Positions 1 to 49,936 of a stretch of 64,000 bases of DNA are shown in pieces. Positions within the stretch are counted from its first letter, which is position 1. Every line of letters starts with the position of its first letter. A program made the translations under genes and the position numbers. Under the pieces are notes generated by a model. The model made no database searches, was not told the DNA's origin, and saw only the letters and a program-made list of their open reading frames with translations. The DNA lies in sequence record PP695294.1; one strand, 5' to 3'.

Positions 1-2
1 AA

Positions 3-191
3 CCTGGTCGTTTAAAGTTTTGGGCAGTTGTGGTAATGCACACTGTGGTGCTACTGGGTATTTTCATGTCTCGCGCTACGCCTGCCTTTTGGGGCTTAGT
101 TGTTTTGGTGTTCTTAGAAGGGGTTTACTTCGGTAATCTGTGGAGCAAGCCCCCGCGTTTAAGGGACCCGGCTTATGACAGTCGTGAATAG
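3..191 (+). CDS. Partial small membrane protein (5' truncated by window edge)
   Basis: Open frame from base 3 to TAG 189-191: PGRLKFWAVVVMHTVVLLGIFMSRATPAFWGLVVLVFLEGVYFGNLWSK..., two hydrophobic segments. Not in the ORF track. Confidence 0.55.
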   Translation, partial: PGRLKFWAVVVMHTVVLLGIFMSRATPAFWGLVVLVFLEGVYFGNLWSKPPRLRDPAYDSRE

Positions 192-306
192 TGTCAACGC
201 AGCCATGATTGCAACAGGTGCGTATGATGGTGCCACCTGGACAGACCTTGGCATTACGATTATCATCTGTGCAATCGGAGCATTTCTGGCATCATGGTTA
301 TTTTAG
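175..306 (+). CDS. 43-aa single-TM membrane peptide
   Basis: ATG175 to TAG306, MTVVNSVNAAMIATGAYDGATWTDLGITIIICAIGAFLASWLF; overlaps the upstream gene end. Confidence 0.5.
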   Translation: MTVVNSVNAAMIATGAYDGATWTDLGITIIICAIGAFLASWLF

Positions 307-20533: not shown

Positions 20534-21412
20534 ATGGATGATGAGAAAAAGCCGCCGCTGAATAGCACACGCGAGCAAATTTGGCACGGTACGCCACCGG
20601 CGTCAGATTCCAGCTACCCGTTAAGGAAAGCTTATTGGAATCTGGTTAAGTTGATGGGTATTAGCGACGGGATATGGAAAGACCTTATCCGTCAACATGT
20701 CAACGACCCGGAGTATCTGAAACAGTTTCGTGACAGCAAACTGACCACGATGACCGACCGCGTTAACCGGCTGAACACCTCACTTACGGGTGGTTCGGTA
20801 CGTAACCTGACAGTCGATTTTACGTGGAAACGTTTCATCGAGGGATTAGTTATCCTGGAGATGCAAACGCTAACAGTCACCCTGCTGACTAAGCGGGGAA
20901 GCTTTGACACGAAGTGTTTTGTATTCGACAGTACGTTTGTGCGTGAGGACTTCATTAAGAACTTACGTAATGAGAACAGGAAGAAACGTAAAGAGCGTTT
21001 CGAGCATCCCGCATCTTACGACGTTAACGAGTATGTCGCGAACATCGACCACACTATCGAACATGTGATGAAGCACATTCTCCTGCGTTTAATCTACAAA
21101 GTTATTCGTGGGTATAAAATCGATGGTGATAAACTGGAACGGTGGACGACGAACTACGTCAACAACCCTAAGTTGTGCCCAGGCACATCATCCAAACGTG
21201 GGGACAGACGAAACAACATGAAACAGGCGATGCGTCACACCGAGGCAATCACCTGGCGTTGGTTTCTAATAATCTTACAAGCGCTGGACGTACGTGAGTT
21301 CGAAATCACTTTCAAAGTTCGTCATCGTAGTGGTAGAGAATATGAGGTCAGCGACGACGTTCCGTTAGCGACGTATAGATTCTGGAGTTCCAATGAAACT
21401 GAACAACCTTGA
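20534..21412 (+). CDS. Hypothetical protein with internal tandem duplication, 292 aa
   Basis: Two ~95-aa units sharing VN(D/N)P...DR.N.(L/M)...TW(K/R).F...L..L. Confidence 0.75.
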   Translation: MDDEKKPPLNSTREQIWHGTPPASDSSYPLRKAYWNLVKLMGISDGIWKDLIRQHVNDPEYLKQFRDSKLTTMTDRVNRLNTSLTGGSVRNLTVDFTWKRFIEGLVILEMQTLTVTLLTKRGSFDTKCFVFDSTFVREDFIKNLRNENRKKRKERFEHPASYDVNEYVANIDHTIEHVMKHILLRLIYKVIRGYKIDGDKLERWTTNYVNNPKLCPGTSSKRGDRRNNMKQAMRHTEAITWRWFLIILQALDVREFEITFKVRHRSGREYEVSDDVPLATYRFWSSNETEQP

Positions 21413-22667
21413 TGGGATTACCAACCAGATAAGCAGCACAACGGGCGCAATAGAGAACAAAGTTAACGATGTTCAAAACCGTGTCCAGTCAACAATTGGT
21501 AATGCCGAGCGCGGTATTGAAAGTGCTCAAAATTTGTACAATAACGTAACCGCCAAAGCAGGGGAAACTTTCGACAAGATCTCCAACATTGGCAACACGA
21601 TAAGTGAAAAATTTGGTAACGTGTTCGGGGGTGGCGACCAAGTCACGGTAGGTGGTAAAAAGGCAGCAGGTTCAGCGGCTTCCGGAGTATCGCCGCCTCA
21701 ACGTGTGCCTACTTTTGCTTCCAACACGAAAGAAGCGCTGCCAGTTATCGATCCACAGAAACGCGATGTGTCCGAACCCTTTCAGAAGGTAAACCAGGAA
21801 GGGAAAACTGCACTGAGCTATCTCTCACCGGGCGGTGCAGGTAGTCTGTTAAGTAAGGGATGGGATACACTGACTGATCTTCGCGATAGCGCTTTAAGCG
21901 CGGTCGGGACAGATTATGCGTCAGTGAAAGCTCGCCTGGAGTCCACGATGAACATCGCGGGACAGCTTGCCAAACTGCCTGGTGAGGTACAGCGTGAAAT
22001 CGGTAACTACGTCGATATGGCCAATAGCGCCAAGTGGCAAGTCACCGCACTGATTGACGATGTTACGCACACGTTTGATAGCTTTAAGGACCTGGACGAC
22101 TTCTTGTCTATCGACGGGATCATTGATAGCTTTACGGGCGGGAGTGGGAATTTCTCCTCGCTGGATATCAACACCTCGTCTGCGTTGATATACGGTATGT
22201 CCACAAAGCTCAATCAATACGGTCTGCCGAATCGCATCGATCCGATGATTCAGGCTATCACCGATCCTATTGCACAACAAGCGTTGTACGGCGAACTGAT
22301 GATACAGGCTGCGGCTGCTGGCAATCTCAATTCTGTTGAGTATTACTTGCCTAAACTACAGCCAGGTCAAGGTGCTGAGATTGCAGATACTGTTATTCAG
22401 AATCTTCTGATGAACCTTAACGTTGAGCCGGGGGTGGGTTACAGCACCTACGGTCAGCGACTGTTGACGTTGTTTAATGCGCTTAATCCAAACTGGGATA
22501 TCTCTAAAACGAATCCTGGAATGGTTGAGCTTAAGCTTTACACGTACGCCAACAGTAATGCGATTCAAGCACTCCTGACCACCGAGAAACGTCCGTACGT
22601 TATCGCCGGTGGTAGTGTCCAATATCAGTCTGCCAGTACGCTGGTGCAGAGCTATTTCGCCTTGTAA
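21393..22667 (+). CDS. Probable virion structural protein, 424 aa
   Basis: N-terminal amphipathic N/Q/S/T-rich repeats; call from recalled synteny. Confidence 0.55.
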   Translation: MKLNNLDGITNQISSTTGAIENKVNDVQNRVQSTIGNAERGIESAQNLYNNVTAKAGETFDKISNIGNTISEKFGNVFGGGDQVTVGGKKAAGSAASGVSPPQRVPTFASNTKEALPVIDPQKRDVSEPFQKVNQEGKTALSYLSPGGAGSLLSKGWDTLTDLRDSALSAVGTDYASVKARLESTMNIAGQLAKLPGEVQREIGNYVDMANSAKWQVTALIDDVTHTFDSFKDLDDFLSIDGIIDSFTGGSGNFSSLDINTSSALIYGMSTKLNQYGLPNRIDPMIQAITDPIAQQALYGELMIQAAAAGNLNSVEYYLPKLQPGQGAEIADTVIQNLLMNLNVEPGVGYSTYGQRLLTLFNALNPNWDISKTNPGMVELKLYTYANSNAIQALLTTEKRPYVIAGGSVQYQSASTLVQSYFAL

Positions 22668-22676
22668 GGTACCTCT

Positions 22677-23528
22677 ATGTCGAAAGATGAAGGTAAGTTT
22701 TTGCGTAGTGCGTTGGAACGTCTACGTGTCGATGGTGCATCGGTGGATGCTTTGGCGGCTGCTTTTGGGTTTACGTTGCCCGCCTCGGTAGAAGCCACAT
22801 ATCCTGTTTTACGTCCCATCCTACCACCAGAAGAAAAGGAAGCCTTTGTACGCTATTTACTGCGTATGGGTTACCAGAGTACCTTGGTGGATATCACGCC
22901 GTCTACAGACGGTCTGAATCACTTCAACATCTATTCGCAGGGGCGAACTGAGATAGGTCGGATGGCGAGTAACTTCTATGCTCGCCCTGGTGAGTATTTT
23001 GTTACCCCCCACGGACCTTTCCGGACGCTCGAAGGTTATTATCATTACCTGCGTATTCTGGATTACTTAATGCGTGAAATTGATAACCGCACTTCGGTGA
23101 TGGAATTTGATATCATGCGACAGGCAGTGAACACCTGGCCTGATATTGAGAAGTTGCGTGCACTAGATGGCAGCGACTGTATCCGGCTAGGTCGTAATCT
23201 GAAAGCGGAAATCTACGGAGGAACCAGTTATAAGCCCGGTTCATTTACCCCGGTTACAGAAAGCCGCTTTATCCATGCGCTGGTAAATAAACTCTTTATA
23301 CTGTCGGTCGACGGGACATCGTTAGGTAATGTATTTGCAGAGATTCTGCGAGCACGTATCCCGCTTAAGCATTATTACATGATGCAAGGGCGTAAGATAT
23401 TCCCAGCACACTGGGACTGGCTACCAAATCTGATTGAGATGATAGCTGAACATATCGATCCTGAGGACAGTACGTTTGATCGAACCGAACTTTTGAAGAA
23501 ACTAGGAATCGATGATGGGACTATTTGA
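22677..23528 (+). CDS. NADAR-like protein (T4 gp30.3-like) with N-terminal extension
   Basis: DGLNHFNIYSQGRTEIGRMASNFY...HGPFRTLEGYYHYL, later LKHY; SNF...F...E motif of NADAR. Confidence 0.65.
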   Translation: MSKDEGKFLRSALERLRVDGASVDALAAAFGFTLPASVEATYPVLRPILPPEEKEAFVRYLLRMGYQSTLVDITPSTDGLNHFNIYSQGRTEIGRMASNFYARPGEYFVTPHGPFRTLEGYYHYLRILDYLMREIDNRTSVMEFDIMRQAVNTWPDIEKLRALDGSDCIRLGRNLKAEIYGGTSYKPGSFTPVTESRFIHALVNKLFILSVDGTSLGNVFAEILRARIPLKHYYMMQGRKIFPAHWDWLPNLIEMIAEHIDPEDSTFDRTELLKKLGIDDGTI

Positions 23529-24174
23529 TATTCTCAAAAACTTAGACGAGCAGCAGGAAAAAGAAGTCATTACTGTTGCGCGTGAGTCCATCTCTACGGA
23601 GAAGGAACGTGAGTATTGCATGTGGGTTAAACCCACTGAAGAAGGTTGGCAATGGCTGTTTGGTCAGACAGGTGAAACGTTCCTGGATGTCATCATGCCG
23701 GTCGTTAACGGCAAACGTCGTGTGCGGTTGTCCACCGATAAAACCGCAGTCTTAACGTTAAAACGACAAGCATCTGATGGTCGTATCGAAGAGAACTCGG
23801 ATATCGGGTTTGCCTCGGGTCTGACCTTCTACGAAGATGGCAATCTTGCACATCTCGTGCGTCGTATCAAACTCGAGCCAGGCGAGCTGGCAGAGCAAGG
23901 TGCGAAGCATTGGGATATCGACTTGTTCTTTAAACTGGCAGGTCACCCAGTTATCGAATCGCAGGCAGGTTTCGAAGACCTTGTCAACGAACTGCGCGAC
24001 TCCACTACATTCGGCGAGTGGGTAAAAGTCGAACTGGAAGTTGAGCGATTTGAGCTGACGTCTATTAAGGACGTATTGCCGTTTGCAGTAGAAGACGCTA
24101 TTCCAGGCAATCCTTCTAACCCCGATGACCAAGAAGTCATTCGGGACTACTGGGATAATGAAACCCGCATCTAA
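23512..24174 (+). CDS. CYTH / triphosphate tunnel metalloenzyme, probable head protein
   Basis: EKEREY (ExE), RRVRL, LTLKR, IEEN, WDIDLF, VELEV; ARE-S site before the domain. Confidence 0.75.
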   Translation: MMGLFDILKNLDEQQEKEVITVARESISTEKEREYCMWVKPTEEGWQWLFGQTGETFLDVIMPVVNGKRRVRLSTDKTAVLTLKRQASDGRIEENSDIGFASGLTFYEDGNLAHLVRRIKLEPGELAEQGAKHWDIDLFFKLAGHPVIESQAGFEDLVNELRDSTTFGEWVKVELEVERFELTSIKDVLPFAVEDAIPGNPSNPDDQEVIRDYWDNETRI

Positions 24175-24178
24175 GTCG

Positions 24179-24215
24179 TACCCTCTCCTTCGGGGGAGGG
24201 TATCTTCATTTTTTA
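24179..24215 (+). terminator. Intrinsic terminator
   Basis: TACCCTCTCC-TTCG-GGGGAGGGTA plus T-rich tail. Confidence 0.75.
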
Positions 24216-24643: not shown

Positions 24644-25066
24644 ATGAACAATATCGCGTTTGAAAAAGGCGTTGGCTTACTTCTGAACAACACCATCATC
24701 GCTGGCACTAATAACGCTAACTGGGAAGCGTTAGCACAGCGTCTCAAAGACAAGCCTGTGAAGATTGTGGTAACGAGCGAGCTGCCGTTAAACGGCACGA
24801 TGGCAGACTGTGGTCCAATGTTTGCAGCGTTTAATGTCGACTATGATTGCGGCTCCGCTTTCTTACAAAACGCCGCGTTACGTAGCCGTCTGTACAGCTG
24901 GCGTTTGTTGGGTCCGGTAAGTAAAGCCGCTGGCCAGATGGTTAACCAGGGCACACCGATGTCGGGTGTGGAAGACCAGACTATCGCCGTTGTCGTTTCT
25001 CGCGCAACCAGCCAGCTTAACTTTGCAATCTGCTACGCGTATCGGGAGGAAGAAGTCTGTGCCTAG
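24644..25066 (+). CDS. Hypothetical protein, 140 aa
   Basis: AAGGAG RBS. Confidence 0.8.
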   Translation: MNNIAFEKGVGLLLNNTIIAGTNNANWEALAQRLKDKPVKIVVTSELPLNGTMADCGPMFAAFNVDYDCGSAFLQNAALRSRLYSWRLLGPVSKAAGQMVNQGTPMSGVEDQTIAVVVSRATSQLNFAICYAYREEEVCA

Positions 25067-25928
25067 CATCATTCAGCAAGTTCAGGCAGTCGAAGAGTGG
25101 TTTCGCAAGACAGATATTTACCAACAGAAAGCGACTGAACGTCAGTTGGTGAAGTATTACGTCACACTCGGCAGGATCTCAGCAGGTGTCGATGAACTGG
25201 ATAACCTAAAGGTGGCTGCCGGTATCGGCGAATCGATTTGGACATTTGCCGCGCTGCTACACCTCGGTCCACATTCTAACTTCGGCGATATTATCGTTCC
25301 GCTGAGTGACGCGCTATCCGTTCGTACTACAACTGGAACGAAAGAAGGGCAGCTGCAGCAACTCATGTTAATTGCGGTCGAGACCGTTAGTGTTGTTTTG
25401 CGTGAACCAGAACCTGACGCTAAGAGTTATAGCGCGCTGCTTCGTAAGTTGATGAGACAGTATCAATTGTTGGCGTGTCGTTGCGGGCTGGAGTTTGACC
25501 GTGTTGTTTTTAATGGCCATCGTAAGCTCGTTAAGACTCCCGAAACATTAAGCACGCTCGGCGAACTGCTTAAAGCAACGTTGCCGTTACCCGACAACGA
25601 TTTGGCGAAACAAACCTATCAGGCGGTGTACAAAACCAACGAGTCAGTTCACGACATTATTGTAAATTGCCTTTTGGCCACATCGAATGATTTACAAACC
25701 AAATATAACGGCGACGTCGCCATGCCGCAGCTATTGCTGCGGATGGAGGACATTATGAACGAAAAGCTGCAAGAGCTTCTCAAGGCGCACTTTGAACCGT
25801 GGATAGTAAGAAAACAAATGTTGTTCAATCGTAACCCTCGCGTTGATGTTAAGTTCGATGGTAACGCTGTAAACATTTGTGCGAACGACGATTTAAGAGA
25901 CATTTTGAATTTATTGAAAGGAAAATAA
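25059..25928 (+). CDS. Inactive MazG-like paralog (pseudoenzyme), 289 aa
   Basis: GTG25059 with GGGAGG; aligns by eye with 29290 but the acidic metal ligands are substituted. Confidence 0.6.
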
Positions 25929-25930
25929 TT

Positions 25931-26968
25931 GTGAAACAATATCTTGAGATGATGCAGAACATTCTGGACGAGGGTCATGTTAAAGGCGATCGTACTGGAA
26001 CAGGGACGCTTTCTGTCTTTGGACGCCAGATGCGTTTTGATTTGCGTAAAGGTTTCCCGTTAATCACGACTAAGAAACTCCACCTGCGTTCTATTATCCA
26101 TGAACTGCTGTGGTTCCTTAGTGGTGATACCAACACCAAATATCTGGAAGATAACGGCGTTACCATTTGGCGGGAGTGGCAAGATGAGAATGGGAACCTT
26201 GGACCCCTGTATGGTGCACAATGGAGACGTTGGAAAGATGTGAAACTGGTGCCTAAGAAAAATGCAGCTTTACTCGAGAAACTGCAAGATGCTGGATACG
26301 CGGATTATGGCGACGCGGACGATGGTTCACAAATGTTCGATGCGCGTGTACTTCTGAAAGAACACGACCAGATCTCTAAGGTGGTTGACCAACTGCGCAA
26401 CGATCCTGACAGTCGTCGTATTATTGTCAGCGCATGGAACGTGGGTGAGTTGGATCAAATGGCGTTAGCTCCATGTCATGCGTTCTTTCAGTTCTACACT
26501 CGTGAGCTGTCTATCGACGAGCGTCTTGATTGGTTTGAAAAGAACCTTCCAGATCAATTTAACGATTCCCGCTTTAGTAATGAAGCTGTAGCAGATGACG
26601 CAGTGTTCCACGTTGAGATGGACGCACTTGAAATACCTCGCCGTGTTCTTTCATGTCAACTGTACGCACGTTCCCAAGACTTCTTCCTGGGAACACCGTT
26701 TAACATCGCGTCTTACGCATTACTCGTGCACATGGTAGCACAGCAAGTTAACATGTTGCCGGGCGATTTCGTTTGGAGTGGTGGCGATGTGCATTTATAC
26801 TCCAACCATCTGGAGCAGGCCAAGCTGCAGCTGACTCGTGAACCCTTACCTTTGCCGAAACTGGTCATCAAGCGTAAACCGGAATCTATCTTCGATTATA
26901 AGTTCGAAGATTTTGAGATCCGGGATTATGTATCACACGACCCAATTAAAGCACCAGTCGCTATCTAA
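25931..26968 (+). CDS. thyA: Thymidylate synthase
   Basis: [67 protein letters not shown]; GTG start at 25931. Confidence 0.97.
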
Positions 26969-49132: not shown

Positions 49133-49936
49133 ATGGAAAACTTGTCACTACGTTATAACTGCGTGGCACTCGCTGGGGTCAATAAAGGGGCAACGCTAAA
49201 GAAAGATGCGGACGGATATTACTACGTCCTGTTAGGTGCACTGAATATTTTCAACTCTGAGAATATTTACTACGCCTATAACGAGTCAAAACATGTCTTC
49301 GAGCGCTCTAACGTTTTCATGCGTAAAGTTTTGGCGGGGAATCTCTTCGGTGAAGAAGACCATCCGCAATACGAACAAGGCATGAGCGAAGCCCAGTGGA
49401 TCGAACGTAACGAATGGATCGAAACGCGTAACGTGTGTATGCACATTCGCGAAGTAGAAGTGAAGCCGACCGACCAGATGTGTAACGGTCTGCCGGTGAT
49501 GGAAATCTGGGGTTGGATTAAACCTAACCGTGAACGTGGTCCGCTTCTGGCGGAAGCACTAGAGAACCCACATCAGAACGTGTGTTTCTCACTGCGTGCT
49601 ATCGTTCGTGAAGGTCGTCTGGGTACGACAATCGTACGCCGCATCGATAAACTGGTCACCTTTGACTGGGTTATTGAAGATGGCCTGCAAATCTGTAACA
49701 AATACTCTGCGATTCAACGCGGTAGTAAAGTGGCACAGGAATCTACTCGCACTTACGTCGACCGCCCTATCAGTCGTCAAGTGTTGGAAGACATTCTGTA
49801 CAATCCGACAACGACCAGCGCTGTTGCCACTGAGTCCCGTCGTGGTGCTCTCCAGCAACTCGCGCAGGAATACCTGCAGCTGGCTCCGAAAGTGTCCAAT
49901 CTGCGGGTAATGGGCATGGGTGTAAGGAGCTGGTAA
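49133..49936 (+). CDS. Prohead protease (phiKZ gp175 / T4 gp21-like)
   Basis: GEEDHP (His77), CFSLRA (Ser153), TFDWV; C-terminal AQE203 and ATE234 self-cleavage-type sites. Confidence 0.9.
   Translation: MENLSLRYNCVALAGVNKGATLKKDADGYYYVLLGALNIFNSENIYYAYNESKHVFERSNVFMRKVLAGNLFGEEDHPQYEQGMSEAQWIERNEWIETRNVCMHIREVEVKPTDQMCNGLPVMEIWGWIKPNRERGPLLAEALENPHQNVCFSLRAIVREGRLGTTIVRRIDKLVTFDWVIEDGLQICNKYSAIQRGSKVAQESTRTYVDRPISRQVLEDILYNPTTTSAVATESRRGALQQLAQEYLQLAPKVSNLRVMGMGVRSW

What the first reader, a model, noticed from the sequence alone, without database searches (positions are those of the whole stretch)
23512..24174. CYTH tunnel enzyme with a prohead-protease-type propeptide
Seen: a 25-aa leader ending A-R-E-S sits immediately before SISTEKEREY, so cleavage would expose the CYTH ExE motif at the N-terminus, where it normally lies. 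The protease in this window has AQE-S and ATE-S sites of its own. Known: phiKZ-like prohead proteases cleave head proteins after (A/S/G)-x-E, and CYTH enzymes hydrolyse or cyclise triphosphates. Inference: a packaged, protease-matured and probably ejected enzyme acting at the onset of infection on NTPs, RNA 5'-triphosphates or nucleotide alarm signals.
Basis: partly seen in the sequence, partly recalled or inferred. Interest (0 to 1): 0.65.

Follow-up and report, generated by a model that had tools for sequence, protein, structure and literature searches.

The report
Head-packaged, protease-trimmed CYTH enzyme of SPN3US-like phage
This gene of a giant Salmonella phage is gp225, a head protein already shown by mass spectrometry to lose a short N-terminal leader to the phage's prohead protease; here its mature part is shown to be a very divergent but apparently active triphosphate-tunnel (CYTH) enzyme, so its unknown function now has a testable chemistry.

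Summary
ORF 23512-24174 (+) is the orthologue of Salmonella jumbo phage SPN3US gp225, 100% identical as protein.

The propeptide is already published. PMC10052503 (Viruses 2023) found gp225 in purified virions and tailless heads. It identified gp225 as a new substrate of prohead protease gp245, with a 24-residue N-terminal propeptide and a mature mass of 22.3 kDa. I compute 22.32 kDa for S26-I220.

The CYTH reading is the new part, and it holds:
- Pfam, NCBIfam and HMM searches of PDB sequences all miss it.
- An AlphaFold model (pLDDT 87) matches CYTH/TTM structures almost exclusively (Z 11.1 to 3sy3 and 2gfg).
- The match starts exactly at the mature N-terminus.
- A profile-profile comparison with 42 Pfam-validated CYTH domains gives 88% probability.
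- The charged tunnel residues are invariant down to 20% identity: E32, E34, R70, R72, K84, E93, K172, E174.
- One signature residue is missing: the lysine of ExExK is a cysteine.

The family is small, with 28 representatives among 1.84 billion proteins. Every member whose source I traced lies in a phiKZ-like jumbo phage, and nearly all members carry a leader with an A/G/S-x-E site.

Ejection into the host, the substrate and catalytic activity remain untested. Overall this is a new, divergent member of known kinds, of moderate interest.

The parts
23512..24174 (+). gp225 gene (220 aa from the first ATG, 219 aa from the second at 23515; stop codon at 24172-24174)
   Evidence: ORF list and sequence. 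100% protein identity to SPN3US_0225. phrog_7768, E 1e-111.
23504..23507 (+). AGGA Shine-Dalgarno, 7 nt before the second ATG; the start region overlaps the end of gp224 (stop at 23526-23528)
   Evidence: Read directly from the sequence.
23512..23586 (+). N-terminal leader (propeptide), M1-E25, ending V-A-R-E; removed by prohead protease gp245; likely a capsid-targeting sequence
   Evidence: Published MS result of a 24-residue propeptide. Low-confidence helix 4-23 in the model. A23/E25/S26 conserved. Motif enrichment in leaders.
23587..24171 (+). Mature CYTH/TTM domain, S26-I220, 22.32 kDa, pI 4.6
   Evidence: AF2 model with pLDDT 87. Foldseek and VIA-align matches to CYTH structures covering model residues 26/29..218. 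hhalign 88% against validated CYTH. Mass computed.
23605..23619 (+). Strand 1 motif E32-R-E34-Y-C36: the ExE metal ligands, with Cys where canonical CYTH has the Lys of ExExK
   Evidence: E32 and E34 invariant in 33 sequences. Profile alignments place them on the ExE of YgiF and other CYTH proteins, and C36 on the K.
23716..23763 (+). Basic tunnel residues R69/R70/R72 and T82/K84 (RxR ... LTxK motifs)
   Evidence: R70, R72 and K84 invariant. They align to the lRvR and tlK motifs of CYTH.
24025..24039 (+). K172-V-E174-L-E176: C-terminal acidic ExE strand with a family-specific invariant Lys
   Evidence: K172 and E174 invariant, E176 nearly so. Aligns to the EvELE strand of CYTH.
24178..24203 (+). 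Intrinsic terminator-like hairpin (11-bp stem, TTCG loop, T-run) 4 nt after the stop codon
   Evidence: sequence.
49133..49936 (+). Prohead protease gp245 (267 aa), the enzyme that removes the leader; its own AQE203|S site leaves the 64-residue C-terminal propeptide
   Evidence: published in PMC10052503.

Best explanation
gp225 is a divergent CYTH / triphosphate-tunnel metalloenzyme built into the phage head.

Shown:
- It is made with a 24/25-residue N-terminal leader.
- It is found in purified virions and in tailless heads.
- The prohead protease gp245 cuts it after V-A-R-E25. The mature protein therefore starts at S26, six residues before the ExE metal-binding motif, which is where free-standing CYTH enzymes start.

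Shown by prediction only:
- Residues 26-220 form the eight-strand CYTH tunnel.
- The charged residues that line the tunnel in known enzymes are kept across the whole family: two Glu on strand 1, RxR, Lys, Glu, Arg, Asp and ExE.
- The strand-1 Lys is replaced by Cys, and an invariant Lys (K172) sits on the last acidic strand.

Inferred:
- The leader works like a T4 capsid-targeting sequence. It brings the enzyme into the prohead core and is then clipped off and lost.
- The mature enzyme is catalytically active and hydrolyses a triphosphate-bearing substrate with Mg/Mn. Its nearest structural neighbours are stand-alone bacterial, archaeal and plant CYTH proteins: two uncharacterised 'putative adenylate cyclases', then PPPi/NTP-type triphosphatases. 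RNA triphosphatases score lower. A small-molecule substrate is therefore somewhat more likely than RNA ends.
- Like many SPN3US internal head proteins, it probably leaves the head with the DNA and acts at the very start of infection.
For: Identity.

Head location, cleavage and 22.3 kDa mature mass: PMC10052503 text and supplement. Computed mature mass of 22.32 kDa.

Fold:
- AF2 model, pLDDT 87.3, pTM 0.80.
- Foldseek against PDB: 3sy3 at E 1e-4, and nearly all top hits are CYTH/TTM proteins.
- VIA-align: Z 11.1 (3sy3, 2gfg), 9.9 (AtTTM3), 9.4 (Sulfolobus TTM), 8.8 (YgiF). Model residues 26-31 align to chain residues -1..4.
- BFVD top hits are CYTH proteins of Ralstonia jumbo phages.

Sequence-level link: hhalign of the 33-sequence family against 42 Pfam-validated CYTH domains gives prob 88%, E 3e-6. 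Motif mapping.

Conservation: E32, E34, R70, R72, K84, E93, W134, K172 and E174 are invariant down to 20% identity.

Leader: the leader with an [AGS]xE site is conserved in 30 of 33 members, against 20.4 +/- 2.7 in shuffled leaders. The T4 CTS analogy is drawn by the SPN3US authors for gp45's 20-residue propeptide.
Against: - No sequence model recognises the family: Pfam CYTH gives no hit for gp225 and E 0.16 for 1 of 30 homologues, and there is nothing in NCBIfam or PDB sequences.
- The Lys of the ExExK signature is absent.
- TM-scores are modest (0.48/0.59).
- I could not inspect model coordinates, so tunnel geometry is inferred from strand periodicity and the alignments.
- No activity, substrate or ejection data exist.
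- The protein is very acidic (pI 4.6), which many internal head proteins are whether or not they are enzymes.
- The published work calls it only a 'head protein of unknown function' and does not list it among ejection proteins.
Confidence: 0.6

Rival explanations
1. Pseudoenzyme or structural head component. The CYTH barrel has been recruited as an internal head or scaffold-like protein and no longer catalyses anything.
For: The strand-1 Lys of ExExK is lost. The family escapes every CYTH sequence model. The protein is strongly acidic, like inner-body proteins. The Ralstonia homologues carry long acidic G/D-rich tails.
Against: Nine charged or aromatic residues stay invariant down to 20% identity, and they map onto the catalytic constellation of CYTH enzymes. 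A purely structural role would not hold exactly these positions.
Confidence: 0.15
2. RNA 5'-triphosphatase that travels with the packaged virion RNA polymerase and processes the 5' ends of the first phage transcripts, as the TTM domain of the poxvirus capping enzyme does in vaccinia virions.
For: vRNAP subunits gp240, gp241 and gp218 are head proteins of the same phage. Foldseek and VIA-align list vaccinia D1, mimivirus and Cet1 triphosphatases. In L107 and L109 the distant homologue lies beside split RNAP beta-subunit genes.
Against: RNA triphosphatases score clearly lower (Z 5.5-6.6) than stand-alone CYTH proteins (Z 9-11). No guanylyltransferase or methyltransferase partner was seen near the gene. 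The acidic surface is an unlikely RNA binder. No capping is known in phages (own knowledge).
Confidence: 0.1
3. Enzyme that works inside the producing cell or the prohead (for example on nucleotides or polyphosphate during assembly or packaging). It is merely trapped in the head and is not delivered to the next host.
For: Only the head location is shown, not ejection. Iyer et al. proposed nucleotide-pool roles for jumbo-phage CYTH and MazG enzymes. A thymidylate synthase and a MazG-like gene lie nearby.
Against: A dedicated, conserved leader with a protease site argues for purposeful packaging. Cytoplasmic nucleotide enzymes of this phage are not virion proteins. PSM counts are similar in virions and heads, which suggests a stable component.
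Confidence: 0.1
4. Class IV (CyaB-like) nucleotide cyclase delivered to manipulate host cAMP or another cyclic-nucleotide signal.
For: The two best structural matches are deposited as 'putative adenylate cyclases', and Yersinia AC-IV matches at Z 7-7.7.
Against: Those two deposits are uncharacterised. Characterised cyclases score lower than triphosphatases. Several 'plant cyclase' CYTH proteins turned out to be mainly triphosphatases (title of 6yp4). The strand-1 Lys used by AC-IV is missing (own knowledge for its role; for its absence).
Confidence: 0.05

Closest known systems
Stand-alone bacterial CYTH proteins GBAA_1210 (PDB 3sy3) and BH2851 (PDB 2gfg), and the characterised triphosphatases AtTTM3, Sulfolobus SaTTM, NeuTTM and E. 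coli YgiF
   Same: Same tunnel fold over the whole mature protein: Z 11.1, 11.1, 9.9, 9.4, 7.9 and 8.8. The ExE on strand 1, RxR, the Lys of 'tlK', Glu, Arg, Asp and the C-terminal ExE strand all align. The mature N-terminus coincides with theirs.
   Different: Only 10-18% identity, and below every Pfam/NCBIfam threshold. The Lys of ExExK is replaced by Cys/Val/Ser, and an extra invariant Lys (K172) sits on the last acidic strand. It is made with a cleavable leader and packaged in a virus capsid. An extra helix lies between strands 7 and 8.
T4 internal proteins (IPI-III, Alt) with their 10-20-residue capsid-targeting sequences
   Same: A short N-terminal leader, removed by the prohead protease after a Glu, on a non-shell protein that ends up inside the head (analogy drawn by the SPN3US authors for gp45).
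   Different: The targeting function of the gp225 leader is not tested. The protease is of the phiKZ gp175 type (MEROPS S80) and cuts A-x-E, not the T4 gp21 motif. Ejection is not shown.
SPN3US gp45, the other gp245 substrate with a short propeptide
   Same: Propeptide of 20 versus 24 residues. Nearly the same site context: V-A-S-E|S-I in gp45 and V-A-R-E|S-I in gp225.
   Different: The mature proteins are unrelated (451 aa versus 195 aa), and the upstream parts of the leaders show no similarity.
Vaccinia D1 capping-enzyme triphosphatase (a TTM packaged with the virion RNA polymerase)
   Same: A TTM-fold enzyme carried inside a virion that also carries a multisubunit RNA polymerase. It is a structural match.
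   Different: Weaker match (Z about 6). D1 is fused to guanylyltransferase and methyltransferase domains, and no such partners are seen here. No proteolytic leader.
Ralstonia jumbo phage proteins RSF1 ORF094 and RSL2 ORF085 (phrog_14791) and RP12 'CYTH domain-containing protein'
   Same: Best BFVD structural matches (E 2.5e-9 to 7e-8). The family profile finds RSF1 ORF094 and RSL2 ORF085 at E 7e-11 and 4e-9. Those two have a leader of about 30 residues with A/S-x-E sites before the ExE motif.
   Different: The RSF1 and RSL2 proteins carry long acidic Gly/Asp-rich C-terminal tails, and RSL2 has a further C-terminal domain. I found no virion data for them.

Membership tests
CYTH / triphosphate tunnel metalloenzyme superfamily | Eight-stranded antiparallel beta-barrel (tunnel) fold | tested here: met
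   AF2 model with pLDDT 87 has 9 strands plus helices. Foldseek and VIA-align top hits are almost exclusively CYTH/TTM, with Z up to 11.1 over 142-149 residues. This is a prediction; I did not inspect coordinates.
CYTH / triphosphate tunnel metalloenzyme superfamily | Two metal-binding glutamates (ExE) on strand 1 at the N-terminus | tested here: met
   E32 and E34 are invariant in 33 sequences. They align to the ExE of YgiF and of 42 validated CYTH domains. They become residues 7 and 9 of the mature protein.
CYTH / triphosphate tunnel metalloenzyme superfamily | Lysine of the ExExK signature | tested here: not met
   Cys36 occupies the position (Cys/Val/Ser/Thr in relatives). It is therefore an atypical CYTH. 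K172 is invariant and may compensate, but this is inference.
CYTH / triphosphate tunnel metalloenzyme superfamily | Basic tunnel residues (RxR, Lys, Arg) and a C-terminal acidic ExE strand | tested here: met
   R70, R72, K84, R118, D137, E174 and E176 are invariant or nearly so. They align to the corresponding CYTH motifs.
CYTH / triphosphate tunnel metalloenzyme superfamily | Detectable sequence homology to validated members | tested here: inconclusive
   Profile-profile comparison gives prob 88%, E 3e-6 in a single pairwise comparison. HMMER-level searches of PDB sequences find nothing.
Pfam PF01928 (CYTH) as a curated family | Score above the gathering threshold (23.2 bits) | tested here: not met
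   No hit for gp225. The best of 30 homologues reaches E 0.16. There are no hits for distant members or the Ralstonia homologues. The SPN3US genome record has no match.
CYTH / triphosphate tunnel metalloenzyme superfamily | Divalent-cation-dependent action on a triphosphate substrate | not testable with these tools
   Needs enzymology.
Substrates of the phiKZ-type prohead protease (SPN3US gp245) | A-x-E at P3-P1, with preference for Val at P4 and Ser at P1' | tested here: met
   V22-A23-R24-E25|S26. The motif definition comes from PMC10052503.
Substrates of the phiKZ-type prohead protease (SPN3US gp245) | Cleavage seen in particles, and presence in heads | tested here: met
   Taken from the literature, not from a tool of mine: semi-tryptic peptides, a 24-residue propeptide and the Head assignment. 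My check is that the computed S26-I220 mass of 22.32 kDa equals the published 22.3 kDa.
Capsid-targeting sequences (T4 CTS type) | Leader necessary and sufficient for packaging into the prohead | not tested
   Only circumstantial evidence: short length, removal by the protease, and conservation of an N-terminal M-x-[FL]-[LF] motif and of the site across the family.
Ejection (E) proteins of giant phages | Leaves the capsid with the DNA and enters the host cell | not testable with these tools
   No published statement found for gp225.

The most novel reading that the evidence does not exclude
SPN3US-like and other phiKZ-like jumbo phages inject a ready-made, protease-matured CYTH enzyme together with their DNA and virion RNA polymerase. 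In the first minutes of infection it would destroy or convert a triphosphate-bearing molecule that matters for host takeover or immunity, for example an alarmone or defence nucleotide signal, or the 5'-triphosphate of early transcripts. That would make it a new class of injected counter-defence or takeover enzyme.
Probability: 0.2. Interest if true: 0.75.

Novelty: new member of a known kind. Interest (0 to 1): 0.45.

Why it matters
SPN3US is the genetic model for giant-phage head assembly. Its head holds about 50 proteins, most of unknown function.

Assigning one of only nine known protease substrates to an enzyme superfamily with a defined chemistry turns 'head protein of unknown function' into a protein with a short, concrete list of assays. 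It also offers a small, monomer-sized cargo for studying how a short leader directs proteins into giant-phage heads.

If the enzyme is injected, it would be one of the few catalytic activities other than the virion RNA polymerase known to be delivered by these nucleus-forming phages. The family also shows how far CYTH can diverge: it is invisible to Pfam and its signature lysine has moved.

Tried and rejected
Searches that gave nothing:
- Pfam, NCBIfam and PHROG scans of gp225, 30 close and 20 distant homologues and the Ralstonia proteins gave no CYTH call. PHROGs returned only 'unknown function'.
- HMM searches of PDB sequences with both family alignments returned only chance hits.
- hhalign against a single YgiF sequence was too weak (prob 0.4%). 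Against 79 near-identical YgiF domains it reached only 21%. A diverse CYTH set was needed.
- The ESM Atlas gave no usable hit.
- Searching the nearest held SPN3US record with PF01928 found nothing.

Literature and other checks:
- I looked for virion data on the Ralstonia homologues in PMC5468394 and its supplements and found nothing.
- The N-terminal domain of the 400-aa fusion P0056 is not related to the upstream gene gp224.

Steps not run:
- The read-mapping tools were not used.
- No alternative genetic code was used.

Rejected idea: E30/E32 as the catalytic pair. E30 is not conserved in distant members.
Full report
**What the window is.** The 2.1 kb around the finding is 100% identical to Salmonella phage 1252 and 97-98% identical to SPN3US and its relatives. 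These are 240-kb jumbo phages of the genus Seoulvirus. The ORF at 23512-24174 (+) encodes 220 aa. Its product is 100% identical to SPN3US_0225, which GenBank starts at the second of two adjacent ATG codons, giving 219 aa. The AGGA box at 23504-23507 lies 7 nt before the second ATG and 4 nt before the first, and most homologues begin M-G/S. The leader is therefore more likely 24 than 25 residues. The gene start overlaps the end of gp224. An 11-bp GC-rich hairpin with a T-run follows the stop codon by 4 nt, so gp225 closes its transcription unit.

**The propeptide is real and already published.** PMC10052503 (Viruses 2023;15:723) reports gp225 as a previously unrecognised substrate of the prohead protease gp245. 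[quoted passage not shown]
- The protease motif is A-x-E at P3-P1, with a preference for Val at P4 and Ser at P1'. The sequence here is V22-A23-R24-E25|S26.
- I compute 22.32 kDa for S26-I220, which matches the published mature mass.
- The supplement lists about 114 peptide-spectrum matches in wild-type virions and about 88 in tailless heads, and assigns the protein to the head.
- The protease gene is in the window at 49133-49936. Its AQE203|S site leaves exactly the 64-residue C-terminal propeptide described in the paper.
- In an alignment of 30 homologues (39-87% identity), the leader is variable except for L8, E16, A23, E25 and S26.

**The CYTH reading.**

*Sequence models.* Sequence models fail. 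Pfam gives no CYTH hit for gp225, and only 1 of 30 homologues reaches E 0.16. NCBIfam and HMM searches of PDB sequences give nothing. The PHROG family is 'unknown function'. Two sources nevertheless label homologues 'CYTH domain-containing protein' by automatic annotation: UniRef for Erwinia phage Wellington gp253, and JGI for a metagenomic protein.

*Structure.* An AlphaFold2 model built on the alignment has mean pLDDT 87.3 and pTM 0.80. Residues 1-30 are of low confidence (54-63) and form a single helix at 4-23. The rest is nine strands plus helices.
- Foldseek against the PDB puts the Bacillus anthracis CYTH protein 3sy3 first (E 1e-4). The list is filled with NE1496, AtTTM3, YgiF, thiamine triphosphatase, class IV adenylate cyclase, Vtc4 and viral RNA triphosphatases. 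Mediator Med18/20 is the only other recurrent fold.
- VIA-align gives Z 11.1 (3sy3, 2gfg), 9.9 (AtTTM3), 9.4 (Sulfolobus TTM), 8.8 (YgiF), 7-7.7 (AC-IV), 7.0 (ThTPase) and 5.5-6.6 (RNA triphosphatases).
- In almost all of the top 15 CYTH rows, model residues 26-31 align to chain residues -1 to 4.
- In the viral structure library the best matches are CYTH proteins of the Ralstonia jumbo phages RP12, RSL2 and RSF1.

*Sequence-level bridge.* A profile search of 1.84 billion representatives found only 28 proteins at E <= 0.001, so the family is narrow.
- Adding the distant members gave a 33-sequence alignment reaching down to 20% identity.
- In it, E32, E34, R70, R72, K84, E93, W134, K172 and E174 are invariant. 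Y35, T82, R118, D137, L175, E176, V177 and P190 are nearly so.
- I collected 42 proteobacterial CYTH domains that pass Pfam's threshold.
- hhalign between the two alignments gives 88% probability, E 3e-6, over 122 columns.
- The alignments are consistent with one another. E32-x-E34 falls on the ExE of ExExK. R70-x-R72 falls on lRvR, and K84 on tlK. E93 falls on the strand-5 Glu, R118 on the conserved Arg, and D135/D137 on the E/D of 'WEvD'. E174-x-E176 falls on the final ExE strand.
- One signature residue is missing: the Lys of ExExK is Cys36 (Cys/Val/Ser/Thr in relatives). The family instead has an invariant Lys172 two residues before E174, on the same face of the strand. I infer that it may take over phosphate binding.

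On this evidence gp225 is a fold-level, probably catalytically competent but atypical member of the CYTH/TTM superfamily. It is not a member of Pfam PF01928 by that family's own threshold.

**Distribution and the leader as a family trait.**
- BLAST-level relatives occur in SPN3US-like Salmonella, Escherichia and Proteus phages, many Erwinia jumbo phages and Cronobacter CR5.
- More distant members lie in Vibrio phages pVa-21 and pVp-JHP1101, and in metagenomic contigs. Two of the three contigs I examined carry split multisubunit RNA polymerase beta genes typical of phiKZ-like phages.
- The extended profile finds RSF1 ORF094 and RSL2 ORF085 at E 7e-11 and 4e-9. These form phrog_14791.
- Almost all members have 13-34 residues ahead of the ExE motif. 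Thirty of 33 have an [AGS]-x-E in that stretch, against 20.4 +/- 2.7 in shuffled leaders. A-x-E occurs in 23 of 33, against 9.4 +/- 2.5. Among the 15 distant members A-x-E occurs in 8, against 3.6 +/- 1.5. The sequences are related, so these are indications rather than probabilities.
- A small hydrophobic motif right after the initiator Met (M-x-F/L-L/F) persists even at 20% identity.

A conserved, cleavable leader on a CYTH domain therefore looks like a shared feature of this jumbo-phage clade. The SPN3US authors compare gp45's similarly short propeptide with the T4 capsid-targeting sequences. The two sites are nearly identical in context: V-A-S-E|S-I in gp45 and V-A-R-E|S-I in gp225. I adopt the capsid-targeting reading as the most likely role of the leader. 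It is not tested.

**What it does.** Shown: head location and maturation. Predicted: fold and active-site conservation. Inferred: activity, substrate and ejection.
- The structural neighbours rank stand-alone CYTH proteins (two uncharacterised deposits, then PPPi/NTP-type triphosphatases) above cyclases and RNA triphosphatases. The mature protein is strongly acidic, with pI 4.6. Both facts lean, weakly, toward a small triphosphate substrate rather than RNA.
- Iyer et al. noted CYTH and MazG triphosphatases scattered in jumbo phages and suggested nucleotide-pool roles. A packaged enzyme with a dedicated leader suggests action at or before the start of the next infection.
- I found no statement that gp225 is ejected.
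- The rivals are a pseudoenzyme, an RNA 5'-triphosphatase working with the virion RNA polymerase, an assembly-time enzyme and a cyclase. Each is listed with its test.

**Novelty.** The propeptide, the protease and the head location are published. The CYTH label exists only as automatic annotation on two homologues. I found no paper linking SPN3US gp225, or any jumbo-phage head protein, to CYTH. What is added here:
- the fold assignment and residue map for gp225;
- the missing strand-1 Lys and the family-specific Lys172;
- the extension of the family to Vibrio and Ralstonia jumbo phages;
- the conservation of the leader with its protease site.

This is a new, divergent member of known kinds, and a modest but useful result.

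**Limits.** I could not read model coordinates, so tunnel geometry is inferred. The hhalign E-value is for one pairwise comparison. The leader statistics ignore relatedness. The window's own assembly is not held, so the nearest record (SPN3US) was used where needed.

Noticed in passing
window 22677-23528 (+), gp224: The gene upstream overlaps the gp225 start by 14-17 nt. It has no Pfam hit at E <= 1 and falls in phrog_652, 'unknown function'. An earlier first-reader note calls it NADAR-like; nothing I ran supports or refutes that. It is absent from the parts of the published virion table that I saw, which list gp223 as tail and gp225 as head.
   Followed up: partly
window 24966-25928 (+), gp228: This 320-aa ORF (GenBank starts it later, 289 aa) matches phrog_10269. 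Its N-terminal part matches a MazG-like pyrophosphatase PHROG only weakly (E 0.0019). That would put a second possible nucleotide-pyrophosphatase-type gene about 1 kb from the CYTH gene, next to thymidylate synthase (25877-26968).
   Followed up: no
protein P0056 (400 aa, metagenomic): In this homologue a 180-residue domain of phrog_10766 (unknown function) is fused upstream of the complete leader plus CYTH module. The V-A-Q-E|A site is therefore internal. It is either a real fusion that the protease would split, or a gene-calling artefact. The extra domain is unrelated to gp224.
   Followed up: partly
L114:3049-3972 (-) RSF1 ORF094; L115:2650-4173 (-) RSL2 ORF085: The Ralstonia jumbo-phage homologues carry a tail of about 100 residues rich in Gly, Asp and Asn after the CYTH domain. 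RSL2 has a further 200-residue C-terminal domain.
   Followed up: no
window 21393-22667 (+), gp223: The published proteome assigns this protein to the tail. Its first 70 residues give weak coiled-coil and tape-measure-like matches.
   Followed up: no
phage records LR535901-LR535913 and LR535917 (SPFM1, 5-10, 12, 14, 15, 20): In these GenBank records the gp225 region matches only in many short pieces. The called proteins (P0042-P0048) are scrambled versions, which points to poor assembly or consensus quality rather than biology.
   Followed up: no
window 49133-49936 (+), gp245: Besides AQE203|S and ATE234|S, the protease has two more A-x-E motifs: ALE144|N and AQE246|Y. Whether ATE234 or AQE246 are cut within the released C-terminal propeptide was not stated in the text I read.
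   Followed up: no
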